From: Iphione sp. A-MEVVRFRX5
Taxonomy: Eukaryota
Assembly (NCBI GenBank): GCA_976226885.1
Contig: OZ320319.1
Span: 78,368,001-78,432,000, forward strand
Reading direction: 5' to 3'
DNA length: 64,000 nucleotides
In this document: in pieces, positions 3,481-63,123 of the stretch
Numbering within the stretch: the stretch's first letter is position 1
How the letters are laid out: every line of letters begins with the position of its first letter
The notes under the pieces: model-generated
Database searches by the model: none
The model's input: only the letters and a program-made list of their open reading frames with translations
What the model was told of the DNA's origin: nothing
Program-made: the position numbers and the translations under genes

Positions 3481-3693
3481 CAAAGAGCAAACGATGCTAA
3501 AAACCCTGAGTATAAGATGAGAGCAATGTGTGTGTCACGTGGGGGGAGAGAGATATAATATCAAACAACTGAAATCAAAAGCATTTCAAGCAGTTTCCGC
3601 GGAAACTCCCCGAATCCATGTGAACAGTTGGTTTCCATGATTACCTGCAAGTGTGAGTGCGGGTAGCACCAGCTGAACGACACCTTAAACAGC

Positions 3694-18600: not shown

Positions 18601-19522
18601 GACCGTGTGAAGCGAACTCGTCTCTGTATCTCATGTAGTTCTACATAACAGATGATCAGAAAGGCACTCCTGAATTCCAAAGAGCATCATACCTATTACA
18701 TATTATCATGAGCCCCCCCTCCCCCCCCCCATTTGGGAAATGGTTACCCGGGCACACACCATCAGCAGAATATGTTGACAGAATTACAGATTAAAACGAA
18801 TCCAACTTGTTAAAAAAAAAAAAAAAGACTGAGCAGTTCATCAACAGAATTATTGGTCCACCACGAGAGTGGAGAATATTACAAATTGTATCAGGTGTTT
18901 TTTTATGCTGGATTCATATGCAGCTGAATTTCTGTTCGATAGTTGTCATGGAAACCAACTGTTCATCAACGGACCTTTTTAAAAAGGTCACACAGGATTA
19001 ACATGATCAACAGTGTTGAATAAGATCAAGATTACAACGACCGCATGAATGCATGAAACCAAACGGCATTATTATTCCTTATGAAAATGAGAATGCATGT
19101 CAACATAACATCGAAGCGAGTTTCGATTTCCAAATAAATACATACACTATTGCGGGTATGGCATCACATACCTTTTTATCTTCAATTTTCCTGAAATCTC
19201 CTTTCGATTTTCCCGAAAGCAATCCTGTTCGAATTTCTTCATGACATGACTTCTCATTCTTCAGACGAAATTCCAAAGTGGAACGAGGAGTAGATCGTAC
19301 AAAAAAACACACTAACAGGGATGATGTCTTCCTGGCGTAAGGTCGTCTAGGAAATGGACCTGTAGTACGTCTTGCGTATGCATGTCGAGCCGCAGGGCCG
19401 TGTGTGTGTACGTAATGACATTTCCATACGCCGCTTCTAATATATCGGACATTTCCAAGTAAATGTCTGCATGGACTCGAATATAGACAGACTGCCCGCA
19501 GGTTGGCTACATCATTAAACGT

Positions 19523-56448: not shown

Positions 56449-57929
56449 TGTAAGTTTCCCTTCTTCTCCCATCACGAAAAACTGAATGAATGTTGCGTAA
56501 TGTCAAATAAATGTTCACATGTGAATATCGACTGAGACAAGGAGGGTATACACATCCACATGTACATGAACATATAAATGTACACAACCTGGAGGCACTT
56601 TCAGAGGGTCATAATTAGACACGTCTCCCGTCTCCTGAAGAGATATACACGTATGTGTATGTGTATGTGTATGACCTGCGGGCACTCGATCCGTAATCAT
56701 GCGACCTTATTTCTCCTGGTTCTATTCGTTGATTATCCCCTCTACCTATTCTAATACACGCACGCCCTGCAGTAATGGAAGAGATGCCACATGAAGAAAA
56801 AAAACCCACAGCCTACCCAGTTTGTCGCGAAGAACCGTTGACTCAAATTTTTTAAGTAGAAGTATCTAAAAAAAAAACAAAAAAACCCCCTCTCGACTTC
56901 CATAAAGGAGGCTACACTGCCGTTCCCACCACCAAACTGCACTAAGAAAACATGATGACAATATTCGCAAGTGGCCTCGACAAGTGGCGGTATATAGGCC
57001 CAACCATGGCAATATGAACGGCTAAATTCAAACACACCCTGCTCGTCCACACACAACCCGTCTTCTTTTTTCTTCCACTGGGTCAGCTGACCCGTTGCAT
57101 TAGGCAGTTTTTCCCCCCCTCGTATTACATGTATTTCGCGGATATACATTACGGCTTTTATCCTGGCCTCCACACCCGATAGCCTTTTATGACCGCTGGC
57201 ATCAGGCCAGACTCCTCTCCTGTCATTATATTGTGAATAACGCCCAGGCAATCACCACGCCATAACTATCTCCCCTCCTCCTGCAACCGGTCACTGCCAC
57301 TCAATCTAGACGAGACATGCTTCGCTATCGATCGACGGCATCAAGAACGTACAAGGACCGCCTAAAAAAAACCCTGCCCCGCCCAGTCTTTATAGCTGTT
57401 GCGATCGTATTGACCGGATCATATCGGCCCCCGCCCTACATTCTTTCAGCTGTTGTTTTCTTCCACAGTGAGAACACTGTGTATACACGCGTGCATGTGT
57501 ACATGTCCCTGAAAGGCAGGGATGTTGAGAAAATATGGAGTGCAACGTACATGAAACTTGCTATTACTGATCTTATACCACTTTAAATGCAACCGAATTT
57601 ATAAGCTGGAACATCTGCTGAAGTTTCTCAAGCAGTTCGCGAATTCCTTCGACGGGATTGCACAATAGATCTCGACTGTAATCAACATTTGAATCAACTT
57701 CCATTGAAAATGAAGAGACCTACGATCGCCTAAGATATGTGCATGTACCTACACAGGTGTTTCCTTCGCTATGAGATGATATGCAAATCACAACTGCTTT
57801 AAACAGCTGGCGTGATTTTCTATGGTTCAGGTGTTACTATCAGAAGATTCTTTTATTGCCATATTTTGAAACCATTCTTGTGGATCTTCTGTCAAAACCA
57901 TTATCTACACGCATACATGCATGCATACA

Positions 57930-57964
57930 CACTCACACACACACATACACACATAACGCCCACA

Positions 57965-58000
<36 letters not shown>
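57930..58000. repeat. (CA)n microsatellite
   Basis: Direct reading. Confidence 0.9.
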
Positions 58001-58004
<4 letters not shown>

Positions 58005-58332
58005 GACATCCATAAGAGCCTTTCTCAAGTATCCAATAAAGCAGTGCAGAACCACGACCTACACTAACGAAAACCAGCCGCCCGACTGTAAAAGTAAAAT
58101 GTAACGATTCTAAAGGGGTTCGGTTGAAATTAAAGAGCATCTGACCAATAAAATAAGCTGTCGTGTGATCAAGGAAGGCCCAAGACATGTGGGAAGTGAA
58201 AGAATCCTAGCCGACGCCATTCGGATTAAAGGGGAAGGAGAGGGGGGGGGGGGCAGGGAGAATAAGACACTGGATACCTGCCTCAACCGAGCACAGAAAT
58301 ACACACCATCAAAACCTCAACATCAAAGTATG

Positions 58333-58412
58333 TTTTTTTTTTTTTTTTTTTTTATTTCTTTTAAGCAGAAAAAAACCGACATCAGCCGCATGGCTGGTCT
58401 ACAGCCGGGTCT
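58333..58412 (-). terminator. LINE 3' end: stem-loop, AATAAA and poly(A) tail
   Basis: Sense CAGCC-atgc-GGCTG stem (58396-58383) with possible GAC/GTC extension; AATAAA 58356-58351; A21. Confidence 0.7.
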
Positions 58413-58583
58413 GCGTATGCAGTAGTATGGCAATGGAACAGCAGCTATATATGCTTAATTAATTTCATAACGTGAGAGTACCAAACTATAAAACTATTAT
58501 GATATGTCCTCCAGGCCAATAGTACAAGGTTATTTCGGACTAAGATAGAGTATTTTGATAAGACCGTTTGTATTGTTGTTAGA

Positions 58584-61547
58584 CTAGTTGAGATCGATGT
58601 CTTTGTTTCTCCATTGTGATAGTATGTCTTGTTTGAAGCTTTTCATTACATGTTGTGAGTCATAATGTGTAGCATGTAGGTGTAATTTGTTCCATTGTTG
58701 AATTATTCTGCAGTATGTGGTTTTGGAAATGTGTGTTTTATGTGAGTGTGGTGGTTGCTGAAAGGTATCTGCGAATGTGTCCCTTAGATTGTAGACTGCT
58801 TGTTGTGGTTTATAGTGTACTTGTATGTAGTAAGGGTGTAGACGAAGGAATGACTTGTATCCCTGCATTACTAGGTGTAGGTTGATGCGTTCTTGTACTA
58901 ACATCATGTTAGCTATAGCATGTGCTTGTGTTGTGGGTGTTCTATTGTCTAGCTGAAGTGCTCTCTTGATGCCTCTGTTCTGTAACCTTTGTATTTGTTT
59001 GAGGTATGTAGTTGGCACTGTAGCCCATACTATGTCCAGGTAATCAATATGTGGTAAGGCCAAAAGTTTATATAGTGTCAATTTGGTGATGTTGTCGATG
59101 TATTTGTTTATTATTCCTAGTGCTGTGAGTGTAATGTTCAGTTTCTTTGTAATGTGTGCTAGGTGTTGTTTCATACTTAGGTTGTCATCTAGAATTAGGC
59201 CAAGGTATTTGTATGTGTGGGTCTGTGTTAGCAGTGTTCCGTTCAGTGTAATATGGGTGTTCTGTCTGGCTTTGTTTATGGTTCTATTAGTTCCAAAGAT
59301 CATGTATTGTGTTTTCTGTATGTTTAGTGCTAGTTTATGGTATGTAAGCCAATCATGTATCTTGTCCAGCACTGCTAGCGATTTGTTTCTTGCATTGTCT
59401 ATTGTTTTGTCAGAGCACAGTATTATTGTATCATCTGCGTAGATGGCATATTCGTTCGGGTTTATAACTGTTGTAATGTTGTTTATGTATAGTGTGAATA
59501 ATATTGGTCCGAGCACAGAACCTTGTGGTACTCCAGTTTGTATGAGTCGTGATGATGATTTATGTCCATTTGCTAAGGTGTTCTGGTGCCTATTGGTGAG
59601 GTAGTTTTTCATTAGCTTATATGCAGAATTAGTAATACCGATTTCAGATAATTTTGTTAATAGCATGTGGTGGGGAACAGTATCAAACGCCTTTGAAATA
59701 TCCAAGAATAATGCTATGGTGTAATCCTTGTTGCTGTTATTCATTCTTATTGTGTCTGTGATATGTTGTGTCATTGTTAGAGTTGAAAAGCCCTTTCTGT
59801 ACCCTCCTTGTTTGTCATCCAGGTATTGGTGTCTATCTATATATTTCATGAGTCTGATGTGTATTATCTTTTCTAGTAATTTGTGCGTGAATGGGAGAAC
59901 TGATATTGGCCTGTAATTTGTTGGCAATTCTTTGCTTCCTCCCTTATGTAGTGGTGTTATTGTAGCTGTTTTCCAATCAGTAGGTATCTGTTGATCATCT
60001 AGTATCTTGTTAATAATGTGCGTTAGTGGTTCTGATAATACTGTATCAAGCAGTTTAATGCATTTCATAGGTATATTAGTGTATCCTGATGGTTTTGTTG
60101 GTGGGAACGATTTGAGAATCGTTAGTACTTCGTTAGTGTTTGTGTGTTCAAAACTGCTTAGTGAAGTGTTGACTATAGGATATTTGTAGTCTGATTTTGC
60201 CTGGGGCAACTTTTCTTGTATTTGAACTCCTATATTGGTAAAGTGAGTGTTAAGGCAGTCTGCAATTTGTGCTTTGTCTGTGATGGTTTTGTTGTGAATT
60301 ACTAGTCTATCAATATTCAAGTCATCTGCTTTCTTGCTAGGTAGAAGTGTACGTAGCTCCTTCCAGTATCTTGCAGGATCATGTTTGAGTTCTCTAAGTT
60401 TTGATGTAATGTAATTTCTCTTTGCATTTCTGATTTTGGTGTTGAGTTGATTTCGTGCTTGCTTAGCTTGTTTGAGTATTGCTTGCGAATGAGTGTTCTT
60501 GTATTGCTTGAAGAGTGTTTGCTTCCTTCTTCTTAATTCTGTAATGTCATGTGTTATCCATTTGGGCATATTGATAGGTACCTTCTTATATTTCAAAGGT
60601 GCGTGCTTGTTTATTGTTGACGTGATGATTTGTTCTAGGTGTTTCCATTGGGCAGTTGCGTCGCGTGTTGTATCAATTGTTGTTATGTTATCTCTAACAT
60701 CATTGATGAACTGGTCCTCACTGAGATTTCTAAAATCACGTGCTTTCACAAAGATGTATTTTGGTTTATTGTTTTGTGACTTTCGTTTGGTGTATGTCCA
60801 GAAATGGTCACTTATGGATGATGTGATTGTTCCTGAGAGTTGATATTTGTTAGGTTTGTTGACAAAAATGTGATCAATACATGTTTGCGTCTTGGGTGTA
60901 ATTCTTGTGGGTATTCTAATGAGGTTTGTCAGTCCAAAAGCAATTTCTATTGCATGTAGTTTTTTATATTGTGTACTTCTAGTCTTAAGGTAGTCAATGT
61001 TGAAGTCACCTAGGACTATTGTTTCAGTAGTATTGGTATCAAATTGTGAAAGTGTATTTTGTAAGTGCTGAATGAATGCGTCTATGTTACCGGAGGGCGG
61101 TCTATACAATAGTATAATCTTGATTGTGCCAATGTACTTGTGCTTGTATTGTAAAATACTAAGTTCTATGTTCTTATTTGATATGCTACTCTGTGGTTCC
61201 AACTGAATAGTGGCATTGTGTAGTAAATGAGTATTGTAATAAAATGCAATTCCTCCGTGTCGTCTGTCTGTGTGTTGTCTGTCCCATCTCAATAATTTGT
61301 AATTTGGTATAGAAAGTTGGTTACTGTTTATAGTATTGTTTAACCATGTTTCAGTTAAGCATACTATGTCAATATTGTTTTCTGCAAGCTCAGCTTGCAG
61401 AATGGCCACTTTGTGTTTCAAACTTCGGATGTTCAAGTGGACAATATTGAGTCCACGTTTGTTAATATCTGTGATATCAGTCAAGATTTTGTTGTATGGT
61501 GTACATGATTCTAGTTTGGTGGAAGTATATCTGGTGCCTATAGGCAC
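58584..61547 (-). CDS. LINE ORF2: APE endonuclease + reverse transcriptase (987 aa from a GTG)
   Basis: APE motifs LNIRSL, CLTETW, GGIAFY, YRPPSG, LGDFNID, PTR..TCIDH, SDH. RT motifs NYRPISVLP, QGGYRKG, FLDISKAFDTV, GVPQGSVLGPILFTLYIN, YADD, YKYLG. CR1/L2-type tail LPHIDYLDIVW, QRLQNR, YNLR. The start codon is GTG and the first ATG is codon 327. Confidence 0.96.
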   Translation of the reverse strand: MPIGTRYTSTKLESCTPYNKILTDITDINKRGLNIVHLNIRSLKHKVAILQAELAENNIDIVCLTETWLNNTINSNQLSIPNYKLLRWDRQHTDRRHGGIAFYYNTHLLHNATIQLEPQSSISNKNIELSILQYKHKYIGTIKIILLYRPPSGNIDAFIQHLQNTLSQFDTNTTETIVLGDFNIDYLKTRSTQYKKLHAIEIAFGLTNLIRIPTRITPKTQTCIDHIFVNKPNKYQLSGTITSSISDHFWTYTKRKSQNNKPKYIFVKARDFRNLSEDQFINDVRDNITTIDTTRDATAQWKHLEQIITSTINKHAPLKYKKVPINMPKWITHDITELRRRKQTLFKQYKNTHSQAILKQAKQARNQLNTKIRNAKRNYITSKLRELKHDPARYWKELRTLLPSKKADDLNIDRLVIHNKTITDKAQIADCLNTHFTNIGVQIQEKLPQAKSDYKYPIVNTSLSSFEHTNTNEVLTILKSFPPTKPSGYTNIPMKCIKLLDTVLSEPLTHIINKILDDQQIPTDWKTATITPLHKGGSKELPTNYRPISVLPFTHKLLEKIIHIRLMKYIDRHQYLDDKQGGYRKGFSTLTMTQHITDTIRMNNSNKDYTIALFLDISKAFDTVPHHMLLTKLSEIGITNSAYKLMKNYLTNRHQNTLANGHKSSSRLIQTGVPQGSVLGPILFTLYINNITTVINPNEYAIYADDTIILCSDKTIDNARNKSLAVLDKIHDWLTYHKLALNIQKTQYMIFGTNRTINKARQNTHITLNGTLLTQTHTYKYLGLILDDNLSMKQHLAHITKKLNITLTALGIINKYIDNITKLTLYKLLALPHIDYLDIVWATVPTTYLKQIQRLQNRGIKRALQLDNRTPTTQAHAIANMMLVQERINLHLVMQGYKSFLRLHPYYIQVHYKPQQAVYNLRDTFADTFQQPPHSHKTHISKTTYCRIIQQWNKLHLHATHYDSQHVMKSFKQDILSQWRNKDIDLN

Positions 61548-62214
61548 AGTCGAAAATAGGGATGACTGCGTGCGGCTTGAAAATTATTAAGGAGTGGTGG
61601 GGAATAATAGTTGATAAATGGAGTTGTAACATATGTTGCGGTAAGTACTGTATAGGTTTTATGTGTTTGTGTGTATGTATATGTGTGTGAATATAGGTTG
61701 TGTTGTTGATGGTCTTACCTACGTACTCGTACAAGATTCAGTTTCAGGTTACGATGACTGGGCGGTCGTCCAGTGATCGTTGAAAATTATGTCACGACTT
61801 CCGGTCTATTTACGTCATAAAGTGATGATTATGACGTGTTTCCGGTCATCTGTTGGTGCTATATGGTTACCTCGATCAGTTGCTATGTTGATTTACTTGT
61901 TAAATAATAAAAGATTAATATTGATTGAAGTGAGAGATAAAATTGTCCTGTAAGGTCTATACCTGATCATGACTGAATAAAATTGCACAGTACTAGGTAT
62001 TTTATACATCCAATGTTAAGTACTGTGAATATGAATTACGTTAAAGTTGTTCGAGTCCCGAGTTGAGTTCAGTGTTAAGTTTGGTGATGTACTTCATTAT
62101 GGTTAAATGAAATTAAATAAAGCGCACAGTGTTAAGTGTTTTAGACATCCAGTGTTAGATACTGTGCTATGTGATTTACGAGTTCAGTGTTGAGTTCAGT
62201 GTTAAAGTTCAGTG

Positions 62215-63123
62215 TTAGGCTTCATCCTGGTCGGCAAATAGGATTGGCGGTCCCGTTTGTGCTGTCTTCACATACACCTTGCCATTCAATGTCCAGGCAC
62301 TAGTAAATCTACCTGATTTTACCAGCTGTCTCGCTCTAAAATATCTAGCTCTATTCACTTCGGAGAGATCTTCATTAAGGAAAATACCTCGTGCAATTCT
62401 CCCTAGGCTAGTACGCTTTGAGTAAACTTGCTGTTTGGTACTCTCACGTATAAACGAAACAAATAATGGCCTGGAGGTTGTACCCGATTCTTTCTTGCCG
62501 ATCCTGTAGATTAGATCAATGTCATTTCTAGTGATATTCTGCTCTAAGTTTAACTTATTGAGTAGATTTATCAGCTCATCCGGATCTGGCAGTTGAGTTT
62601 CAGGTAAGCCTATTATCTTCAGTGCTCGATTCCTCGTCCTATTCTCGAGCTCTTCTGTCCTGTTGACAGTGTTGATAGTCGAGTTGGTTACATCAGCCAT
62701 CTGGTTTTCTACTGCATCTAGCCTTTCATCCATATATTCAATAGTTTCCAACCTCGTTTTCCTTATCGCACTTTCCAGCAGTTTTTCTAACTGCCTTGTG
62801 TTAGTGGATATTGTTGAGAATTTGGATACGGTTGAAGTCATTGATGTGTTAGAGTCACTTGATTCGGGTCTTGGGTTTGCTGTAGATGTACTTGGAACAG
62901 CTAAATCCCGCTTCTTTGCCACATCTGAATTACTTAATGCTTGAGCATTTGTGTCCTTGTCCTTGACAGTCTTTTGTTCAGCTGCCTTGCTATTTGCTTT
63001 AGCTTGGGATTTATCAATTTCTTCCTTGGTGAAGCCTTTGAAGGACGATGCCGATCCACTCGATTCACTTGGCTTCTTTGCTGGAGTTTTGCCTTTTTTG
63101 GATTTAAAAGGCCTCAGTGGCAT
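62215..63123 (-). CDS. LINE ORF1: L1-type coiled-coil + RRM + CTD RNA-binding protein (302 aa)
   Basis: ATG at 63123 (the track start at 63138 is TTG). Heptad-like LEKLLESAIR...LDAVENQM, then ELENRTRNRALKIIGLPE, IDLIYRIG..RPLFVSF, IFLNEDL, AWTLNGKVYVK, typical of Transposase_22/L1-like ORF1p. Confidence 0.9.
   Translation of the reverse strand: MPLRPFKSKKGKTPAKKPSESSGSASSFKGFTKEEIDKSQAKANSKAAEQKTVKDKDTNAQALSNSDVAKKRDLAVPSTSTANPRPESSDSNTSMTSTVSKFSTISTNTRQLEKLLESAIRKTRLETIEYMDERLDAVENQMADVTNSTINTVNRTEELENRTRNRALKIIGLPETQLPDPDELINLLNKLNLEQNITRNDIDLIYRIGKKESGTTSRPLFVSFIRESTKQQVYSKRTSLGRIARGIFLNEDLSEVNRARYFRARQLVKSGRFTSAWTLNGKVYVKTAQTGPPILFADQDEA

What the first reader, a model, noticed from the sequence alone, without database searches (positions are those of the whole stretch)
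58470..62483. LINE 3'UTR carries perfect antisense blocks to its own ORF1, 4 kb away, in pseudoknot order
Seen: 17-bp perfect inverted repeat ACGTGAGAGTACCAAAC 58470-86 / GTTTGGTACTCTCACGT 62433-49, and an adjacent 11-bp one CCTCCAGGCCA 58508-18 / TGGCCTGGAGG 62467-77. A 6-bp block (58522-27 / 62478-83) fits the same pattern but is not significant alone. In the transcript the order is A,B in ORF1 (codons TSRP and IRESTK of the RRM) and A',B' in the 3'UTR, so the helices are crossed or mutually exclusive rather than nested. My rough estimate is ~1e-4 for the 17-mer alone by chance, far lower jointly. Inference: a built-in long-range RNA interaction that loops the LINE mRNA. It could regulate ORF1 versus ORF2 translation, bring the RT-recognised 3' stem-loop into the RNP, favour full-length templates, or generate dsRNA for self-silencing. 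I know of no description of this in CR1-group LINEs.
Basis: partly seen in the sequence, partly recalled or inferred. Interest (0 to 1): 0.82.

Follow-up and report, generated by a model that had tools for sequence, protein, structure and literature searches.

The report
LINE 3'UTR antisense blocks to ORF1
An intact jumping gene (LINE) carries two short, perfect stretches in its tail that are antisense to its own first gene 4 kb away; the match is real and not random, but with only one copy available it looks more like a copying scar than a proven RNA-folding signal.

Summary
There is a 17-bp perfect inverted repeat (58470-86 / 62433-49), an 11-bp one (58508-18 / 62467-77) and a 6-bp one. All lie between the 3'UTR and the RRM-coding part of ORF1 of one intact minus-strand LINE, and the blocks are in crossed order. 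Chance is unlikely: about 1e-3 for the 17-mer in this element and about 1e-6 jointly.

The interpretation, a built-in long-range RNA interaction, could not be tested. No second copy of this family was found in the window, the scan's notes, sequencing runs, 5.8 billion proteins, 1.84 billion cluster representatives or metagenome contigs. The best relatives are 37% identical or less.

Ten distant relatives show no 3'UTR-to-body complementarity above shuffles. The predicted minimum-energy fold of the 4.9-kb RNA omits both helices; forcing them costs +3.7 and +9.3 kcal/mol. The blocks are perfect, sharp-edged and set in unrelated sequence.

My best reading (0.4) is that short reverse-complement patches of ORF1 were copied into the 3'UTR by polymerase or RT template switching, so any pairing is incidental. 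A functional pseudoknot-type long-range interaction stays open (about 0.25), and chance at about 0.15.

An unverified scan note (s1-320290) reports similar split complementarity in another LINE of this genome.

The parts
62215..63123 (-). ORF1, 302 aa from the first ATG: disordered N-terminus, long coiled coil (aa 95-164), RRM (167-251), C-terminal domain. L1-ORF1p type.
   Evidence: the ORF listing; alignment with 18 relatives; AF2 model; Foldseek hits to the human LINE-1 ORF1p trimer
58584..61547 (-). ORF2, 987 aa, intact: APE-type endonuclease plus reverse transcriptase. No ATG before the endonuclease (frame opens at GTG).
   Evidence: Exo_endo_phos 7.8e-15, RVT_1 2e-39
58354..58583 (-). 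3'UTR of the LINE (about 230 nt). No significant local fold (z = +0.9).
58333..58353 (-). Pure 21-nt A-run (poly(A) tail) with an AATAAA hexamer abutting it at 58351-58356.
   Evidence: read directly
62433..62449 (-). Arm A in ORF1 (RNA ACGUGAGAGUACCAAAC; codons I225-Q231, start of RRM helix 2).
58470..58486 (-). Arm A' in the 3'UTR, perfect 17-nt complement of arm A. Starts 98 nt after the ORF2 stop.
62467..62477 (-). Arm B in ORF1 (RNA CCUCCAGGCCA; codons T216-P219, just before the RRM strand 220-224).
58508..58518 (-). Arm B' in the 3'UTR, perfect 11-nt complement of arm B (14 nt with one mismatch).
62478..62483 (-). Arm C in ORF1 (GUACAA), directly 5' of B in the RNA. Not significant alone.
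58522..58527 (-). Arm C' in the 3'UTR (UUGUAC), 3 nt 5' of B' in the RNA.
62413..62427 (-). Local imperfect partner of arm A inside ORF1 (13-bp hairpin in the MFE). It would compete with the long-range helix.

Best explanation
The blocks are a real, non-random feature of this LINE copy. They most likely arose by templated copying, not by selection for pairing.

At some point in this copy's lineage a polymerase or reverse transcriptase working at the 3'UTR briefly used the ORF1 sense strand as template. This could be snap-back or template-switch synthesis during break repair, second-strand synthesis or replication. It left two or three short reverse-complement patches (17, 11 and perhaps 6 nt) separated by unrelated filler (3 and 21 nt).

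The transcript can therefore form either of two strong long-range helices, or both as a pseudoknot. That capacity is probably an incidental by-product tolerated by the element.

Shown: the blocks, their perfection, their sharp edges, their crossed order and their improbability by chance. Inferred: the copying mechanism and the lack of function.
For: **Blocks are isolated.**
- All Watson-Crick, no G-U, abrupt edges, no extended similarity around them in antisense orientation.
- No similarity in sense orientation either (flanks and spacer P = 0.6-0.95).
- This fits short patches copied in separate steps. It does not fit a decayed inverted duplication or slowly evolved helices.

**Order rules out one inversion.** The crossed block order excludes a single inverted duplication.

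**A known process makes such mosaics.**
- Pol theta alternates between non-templated synthesis, snap-back (cis) and trans-templated synthesis, with tracts of 7-15 nt (PMC4912351).
- Short template switches create perfect inverted copies without selection (PMC5453318).

**Hint of more patches.** The same 112-nt UTR zone (58417-58528) holds 10 antisense matches of 9 nt or more to the element body against 3.1 expected. Dinucleotide shuffles give P = 0.0025; 0.5% of 1916 control windows reach 10. The zone was chosen post hoc.

**No sign the pairing is used.**
- It is absent from the MFE of the 4944-nt RNA.
- Arm A is sequestered locally.
- The arms lie mid-ORF1, where ribosomes would unwind them. 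They are not near a start, a stop or the ORF1-ORF2 junction.
- Ten relatives have nothing comparable.
Against: - Documented snap-back and short template-switch events copy from tens to a few hundred bp away (PMC5453318 searched 100-200 bp). This template is about 4 kb away.
- No junction microhomology is visible at the A' patch, and only 'TA' plus a mismatch at B' (read).
- The three blocks keep the same order and nearly the same spacing on both arms (offsets 38/52 versus 34/45 nt). The patchwork model does not predict this (roughly 7% coincidence for B, my estimate).
- The element is intact with a pure A-run, so the feature is at least compatible with activity.
- No ancestral copy lacking the patches is available to show an insertion event.
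Confidence: 0.4

Rival explanations
1. Functional long-range RNA-RNA interaction. In non-translated LINE RNA, helped by the chaperone activity of ORF1p, the 3'UTR pairs with the RRM-coding part of ORF1. It forms either an H-type pseudoknot with a 4-kb loop or two alternative helices. This would loop the RNA to control translation, RNP packing or template choice for reverse transcription.
For: - Joint chance probability is about 1e-6 per element.
- The duplexes are strong: -28.4 and -22.8 kcal/mol.
- Forcing helix A costs only 3.65 kcal/mol relative to an MFE of -880, which is within model error.
- Linkers of 17 and 21 nt are long enough to cross 17-bp and 11-bp stems (inference).
- The crossed order argues against a simple duplication, and independent acquisition of two blocks in the same zones is what selection could give.
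- The element is intact.
- Analogues exist: Ty1 CYC5 (in GAG) with CYC3 (3' end) (PMC7969010); flavivirus capsid-region and 3'UTR cyclization sequences (PMC7999817); the BYDV frameshift element pairing across about 4 kb with the 3'UTR (PMC5893793).
- An unverified scan note reports split complementarity in another LINE of this genome (s1-320290).
Against: - No conservation or covariation data at all.
- 0 of 10 related LINEs show it.
- It is not in the MFE.
- 17 perfect base pairs is much longer than proven long-range elements (8-nt core in flaviviruses).
- The arms are inside a translated ORF, far from any translational landmark.
- Known cyclization motifs are in inverted (nested) order (PMC7999817), unlike here.
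- The cited review warns that predicted interactions of this kind have failed validation (PMC5893793).
Confidence: 0.25
2. Coincidence. Two unrelated chance matches happen to lie near each other in an AT-rich, strand-skewed element.
For: - The scan reads very many windows and elements. A 17-mer inverted repeat alone is expected about once per 1000 elements of this size.
- Blocks of 11 nt or more are common, at 2.3 per element shuffle.
- The U-rich UTR zone naturally matches the A-rich body.
- The 6-mer adds nothing.
Against: - The joint probability of the 17-mer with an 11-mer within 60 nt on both arms is about 2e-6 to 7e-6 per element.
- 0 of 300 UTR shuffles reach either statistic.
- Among 1916 control windows of the same genome none reaches the observed coverage.
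Confidence: 0.15
3. Decayed simple inverted duplication, or a nested antisense insertion of an ORF1 fragment into the 3'UTR.
For: It would give antisense ORF1 sequence in the UTR.
Against: - The block order is collinear, not inverted.
- The spacers (17 versus 21 nt) and flanks are unrelated in either orientation.
- 34 of 34 block positions are perfect while everything between is dissimilar, which neutral decay does not produce.
Confidence: 0.03

Closest known systems
Ty1 CYC5/CYC3 cyclization (LTR retrotransposon)
   Same: A retroelement RNA in which a sequence in the 5' part (GAG region) pairs with a sequence at the 3' end, far apart on the same RNA. A chaperone-like Gag/ORF1 protein could promote annealing (PMC7969010).
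   Different: - Ty1 needs cyclization for tRNA-primed reverse transcription and strand transfer. A target-primed LINE has no such step (established knowledge).
- Ty1 has one genetically validated helix. Here there are two or three perfect, crossed blocks and no validation.
Flavivirus genome cyclization (5' UAR/DAR/CS with the 3' counterparts)
   Same: Several separate complementary blocks, one within the capsid-coding region, pair with the 3'UTR over kilobases and compete with local hairpins (PMC7999817). Here arm A also has a local competitor hairpin.
   Different: - The flavivirus motifs are in inverted order and form a nested panhandle. Here the order is the same on both arms (crossed).
- The flavivirus core is 8 nt and conserved across species. 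Here the block is 17 nt and seen in one copy.
BYDV long-distance frameshift element (and tombusvirid readthrough or frameshift interactions)
   Same: A coding-region element pairs with the 3'UTR about 4 kb away to regulate expression of the downstream polymerase (PMC5893793). The distance and the ORF-to-UTR geometry are similar.
   Different: - The viral site sits next to the recoding signal and pairs through a loop or bulge of a local structure.
- Here the arms are about 650 nt upstream of the ORF1 stop, and no recoding signal was seen nearby (read).
Snap-back or template-switch insertion scars (Pol theta end joining; short template switches)
   Same: Short perfect reverse-complement tracts interspersed with unrelated filler, produced in one complex event without selection (PMC4912351; PMC5453318).
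   Different: - The templates described are within tens to hundreds of bp. Here the template is 4 kb away.
- No clear junction microhomology.
- No ancestral allele is available to show the event.

Membership tests
Long-range RNA-RNA interaction / cyclization element | Complementary tracts on the same transcript able to form a stable helix | tested here: met
   17/17 and 11/11 Watson-Crick, -28.4 and -22.8 kcal/mol. Both arms lie between the ORF1 start and the A-run of one minus-strand element.
Long-range RNA-RNA interaction / cyclization element | Conservation of pairing, ideally covariation, among copies and relatives | not testable with these tools
   No same-family sequence was found. Ten distant relatives show nothing comparable, which does not bear on this family.
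Long-range RNA-RNA interaction / cyclization element | Predicted or measured to form in the full-length RNA | tested here: inconclusive
   Absent from the MFE of the 4944-nt RNA. Forcing A costs +3.65 and forcing B +9.25 kcal/mol. No RNA runs were listed.
Long-range RNA-RNA interaction / cyclization element | Motif order inverted between the two ends (nested panhandle), as in flaviviruses | tested here: not met
   The order C, B, A is the same on both arms. Only a pseudoknot or alternative helices are possible.
Simple inverted duplication | Continuous, collinear reverse-complement similarity with inverted block order | tested here: not met
   Local alignments stop at the block edges. The order is not inverted.
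Templated-insertion / template-switch scar | Short reverse-complement tracts mixed with unrelated filler | tested here: met
   Tracts of 17, 11 and 6 nt separated by 21 and 3 nt of unmatched sequence.
Templated-insertion / template-switch scar | Template close to the junction (tens to hundreds of bp) | tested here: not met
   The template lies 3.96 kb away.
Templated-insertion / template-switch scar | Ancestral allele or copy without the patches | not testable with these tools
   No other copy is available.
L1-type ORF1p (coiled coil, RRM, CTD) | Trimerising coiled coil followed by an RRM and a C-terminal domain | tested here: met
   AF2 model: helix 95-164, b-a-b-b-a-b 167-251, CTD. Foldseek 2yko/2ykp/2ykq E 4e-8, 2w7a RRM. 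3039 sequence relatives, eight of 19 sampled match Baculo_FP_2nd.
   No named reference RTs were available. The APE plus RT architecture is met. The 3' end is a 21-nt A-run with AATAAA, which is unlike the CR1/L2 tails I know (own knowledge).

The most novel reading that the evidence does not exclude
A target-primed LINE uses a built-in, pseudoknot-ordered long-range RNA interaction between its 3'UTR and the RRM-coding part of ORF1. This would be a cyclization-like device so far known only from RNA viruses, retroviruses and LTR retrotransposons. It could switch the RNA between translated mRNA and packaged template, or mark full-length RNAs for reverse transcription.
Probability: 0.25. Interest if true: 0.8.

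Novelty: new variant of a known kind. Interest (0 to 1): 0.4.

Why it matters
If the pairing is used, it would be the first cyclization-type signal I know of in a non-LTR retrotransposon. My literature searches found none for LINEs. It would offer a handle on how LINE RNA chooses between translation and reverse transcription.

If it is a copying scar, it is a clean example of multi-patch reverse-complement templating over 4 kb inside a mobile element. It would also be a caution that perfect long-range complementarity can arise without selection.

Either way it is testable at once on the full genome, where other copies of the family should exist.

Tried and rejected
**Searches for other copies or relatives (all empty or distant)**
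- Other copies in the window: blastn and tblastn found only self.
- Exact-protein look-up of ORF2: not on record.
- ORF2 word search: best 34% identity.
- ORF1 word search: one weak hit.
- ORF1 against 1.84 billion representatives: 3039 relatives, best 34-36% (44% over a partial stretch).
- ORF2 C-terminal 348 aa, to catch 5'-truncated copies: best 37% (43% over a partial stretch).
- Sequencing runs: none listed, twice, so read laying could not be used.
- Scan relatives: none.
- Metagenome contigs by protein and by a B'-gap-A' DNA pattern: none.

**Tests on distant relatives.** A general UTR-to-ORF1 complementarity in ten related LINE loci (L001-L010) is not above shuffles.

**Origin models rejected**
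- Decayed inverted duplication: rejected.
- A direct duplicate with each block inverted in place: flanks and spacer are not similar.

**Other checks that found nothing**
- Rfam on the element: only low-complexity mir-297 noise.
- Local structure of the 3'UTR and of the ORF1 arm region: not better than shuffles.
- Target-site duplication to fix the 5' end: none found.

Full report
**What is there**

The stretch lies in one LINE on the minus strand.
- ORF1 runs 63123 to 62215 (302 aa from the first ATG).
- A 667-nt spacer follows. It contains a 120-nt imperfect tandem duplication.
- ORF2 runs 61547 to 58584 (987 aa, no internal stop) with an APE-type endonuclease and a reverse transcriptase.
- A 3'UTR of about 230 nt ends in an AATAAA hexamer abutting a pure 21-nt A-run (58353-58333).
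- No target-site duplication was found, so the 5' end is undefined.

ORF1 has no Pfam hit of its own, but it has 3039 HMMER relatives. Its AlphaFold model (pLDDT 75) shows a long coiled coil, an RRM and a C-terminal domain. The best structural matches are the human LINE-1 ORF1p trimer. The 'CR1-group' label was not tested.

**The observation**

All three blocks are exactly as described.
- A: 58470-86 / 62433-49, 17/17.
- B: 58508-18 / 62467-77, 11/11, or 14 nt with one mismatch.
- C: 58522-27 / 62478-83, 6/6.

In the RNA, ORF1 reads C-B-(17 nt)-A and the UTR reads C'-(3 nt)-B'-(21 nt)-A'. The same order on both arms means the helices cross. B covers codons T216-P219 and A covers I225-Q231. Together they bracket the RRM strand 220-224.

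**Chance**
- One of 1500 dinucleotide shuffles of the element had a perfect inverted repeat of 17 nt or more.
- Blocks of 11 nt or more occur 2.3 times per shuffle. One within 60 nt on both arms of a given pair has probability about 3e-3. The joint figure is a few in a million per element.
- Shuffling only the UTR against the real body gave 0 of 300 for either the longest block or the two-block sum.
- Given how many elements a genome-wide scan reads, coincidence is not impossible, but it is a minor rival.

**What it is not**

It is not a decayed inverted duplication or a nested antisense fragment.
- The order is wrong for that.
- Alignments stop dead at the block edges.
- Spacers and flanks are unrelated in either orientation.

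It matches no Rfam family. Neither the UTR nor the ORF1 arm region folds better than shuffles.

**Can the interpretation be tested?**

I found none by any of these routes:
- the window;
- the scan's index;
- sequencing runs (none listed);
- exact-protein look-up;
- word searches with ORF2, ORF1 and the ORF2 C-terminus (best 34%, 28% and 37% identity);
- an exhaustive HMMER search of 1.84 billion representatives with ORF1 (best 34-36%);
- metagenome contigs by protein or by DNA pattern.

Family-level conservation and covariation therefore remain untested.

As a weaker test I fetched ten loci of the nearest ORF2 relatives (27-34% identity, mostly one ENA assembly, several with NADAR-type ORF1). 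None has UTR-to-body complementarity above its own shuffles. This is not a general, easily visible property of the wider group.

**Thermodynamics**
- The isolated duplexes are strong: -28.4 and -22.8 kcal/mol.
- The minimum-energy fold of a 4944-nt transcript model (-880.0 kcal/mol) contains none of the three helices.
- In that fold arm A sits in a local 13-bp hairpin with 62413-62427, and the UTR arms pair locally.
- Forcing A costs 3.65 kcal/mol and forcing B costs 9.25 kcal/mol. This is within the error of such models, so it says neither yes nor no.
- Sterically, linkers of 17 and 21 nt could span 17-bp and 11-bp stems in an H-type pseudoknot, with the 4-kb body as the middle loop (inference).

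**Which explanation**

Four features point to copying rather than slow selection.
- Every block position is Watson-Crick.
- The edges are abrupt.
- The 17-bp helix is far longer than validated long-range elements.
- The sequence between the blocks is unrelated.

Mosaics of short reverse-complement tracts and filler are what Pol theta-type snap-back or trans synthesis and short template switches produce (PMC4912351; PMC5453318).

A further hint comes from the 112-nt UTR zone around the blocks. It holds ten antisense matches of 9 nt or more to the element body against about 3 expected (P = 0.0025 by shuffles; 0.5% of control windows). The zone was chosen after seeing the data, and the extra matches are AT-rich.

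Three things count against the scar reading.
- The 4-kb distance to the template.
- The lack of junction microhomology.
- The unexplained collinearity and near-equal spacing of the blocks.

I therefore put templated origin with incidental pairing at 0.4, a functional interaction at 0.25, coincidence at 0.15, and the rest on things not thought of.

**Comparison with known systems**

The nearest functional analogues are:
- Ty1 CYC5/CYC3 (PMC7969010);
- the flavivirus cyclization sequences, whose motif order is inverted, unlike here (PMC7999817);
- the BYDV 4-kb frameshift interaction (PMC5893793).

That last review also records predicted interactions that failed validation. My searches found no described long-range interaction in a LINE RNA. 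This is absence in the searched library only.

**Verdict**

The interpretation cannot be judged on present data and is mildly disfavoured. It is a worthwhile but cheap lead, because one blastn of the family against the full genome would decide most of it.

Noticed in passing
window 58417-58528: The middle of the 3'UTR is tiled by ten antisense matches of 9 nt or more to scattered places in the same LINE (ORF1, spacer, ORF2). About 3 are expected. Eight remain after removing blocks A and B. The zone was chosen post hoc and the matches are AT-rich, so this is only suggestive.
   Followed up: partly
window 61548-62214: The spacer between ORF1 and ORF2 is 667 nt and holds an imperfect 120-nt tandem duplication (61985-62103 versus 62124-62231, 71%) with AGTTCAGTGTT repeats. 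ORF2 has no ATG before its endonuclease, so its frame opens at GTG 61547. This matches scan note s1-317905.
   Followed up: partly
window 3621-3640 and 18946-18965: A 20-bp perfect, complex inverted repeat 15 kb apart. It is the only other high-complexity perfect inverted repeat of 17 nt or more in the window, and is probably two copies of a dispersed repeat.
   Followed up: no
window 57899-58017 and 61659-61737: A CA-rich microsatellite just outside the LINE's 3' end is complementary to a TG-rich patch in the ORF1-ORF2 spacer. Both give sub-threshold mir-297 Rfam hits that look like low-complexity noise.
   Followed up: no
L001, L002, L004, L007, L008 (ENA assembly ERZ25767047): The nearest ORF2 relatives come mostly from one ENA assembly and sit downstream of ORF1s carrying a NADAR domain. 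L007 also has a GDSL-lipase-like gene nearby. This echoes scan notes on three-ORF NADAR LINEs in this genome. The LINE studied here has a plain L1-type ORF1 without NADAR.
   Followed up: no
window 62413-62449: ORF1 arm A and a sequence 5 nt downstream form a 13-bp imperfect local hairpin. The downstream half resembles the UTR arm A' because both complement A. The hairpin is not significant by shuffles.
   Followed up: partly
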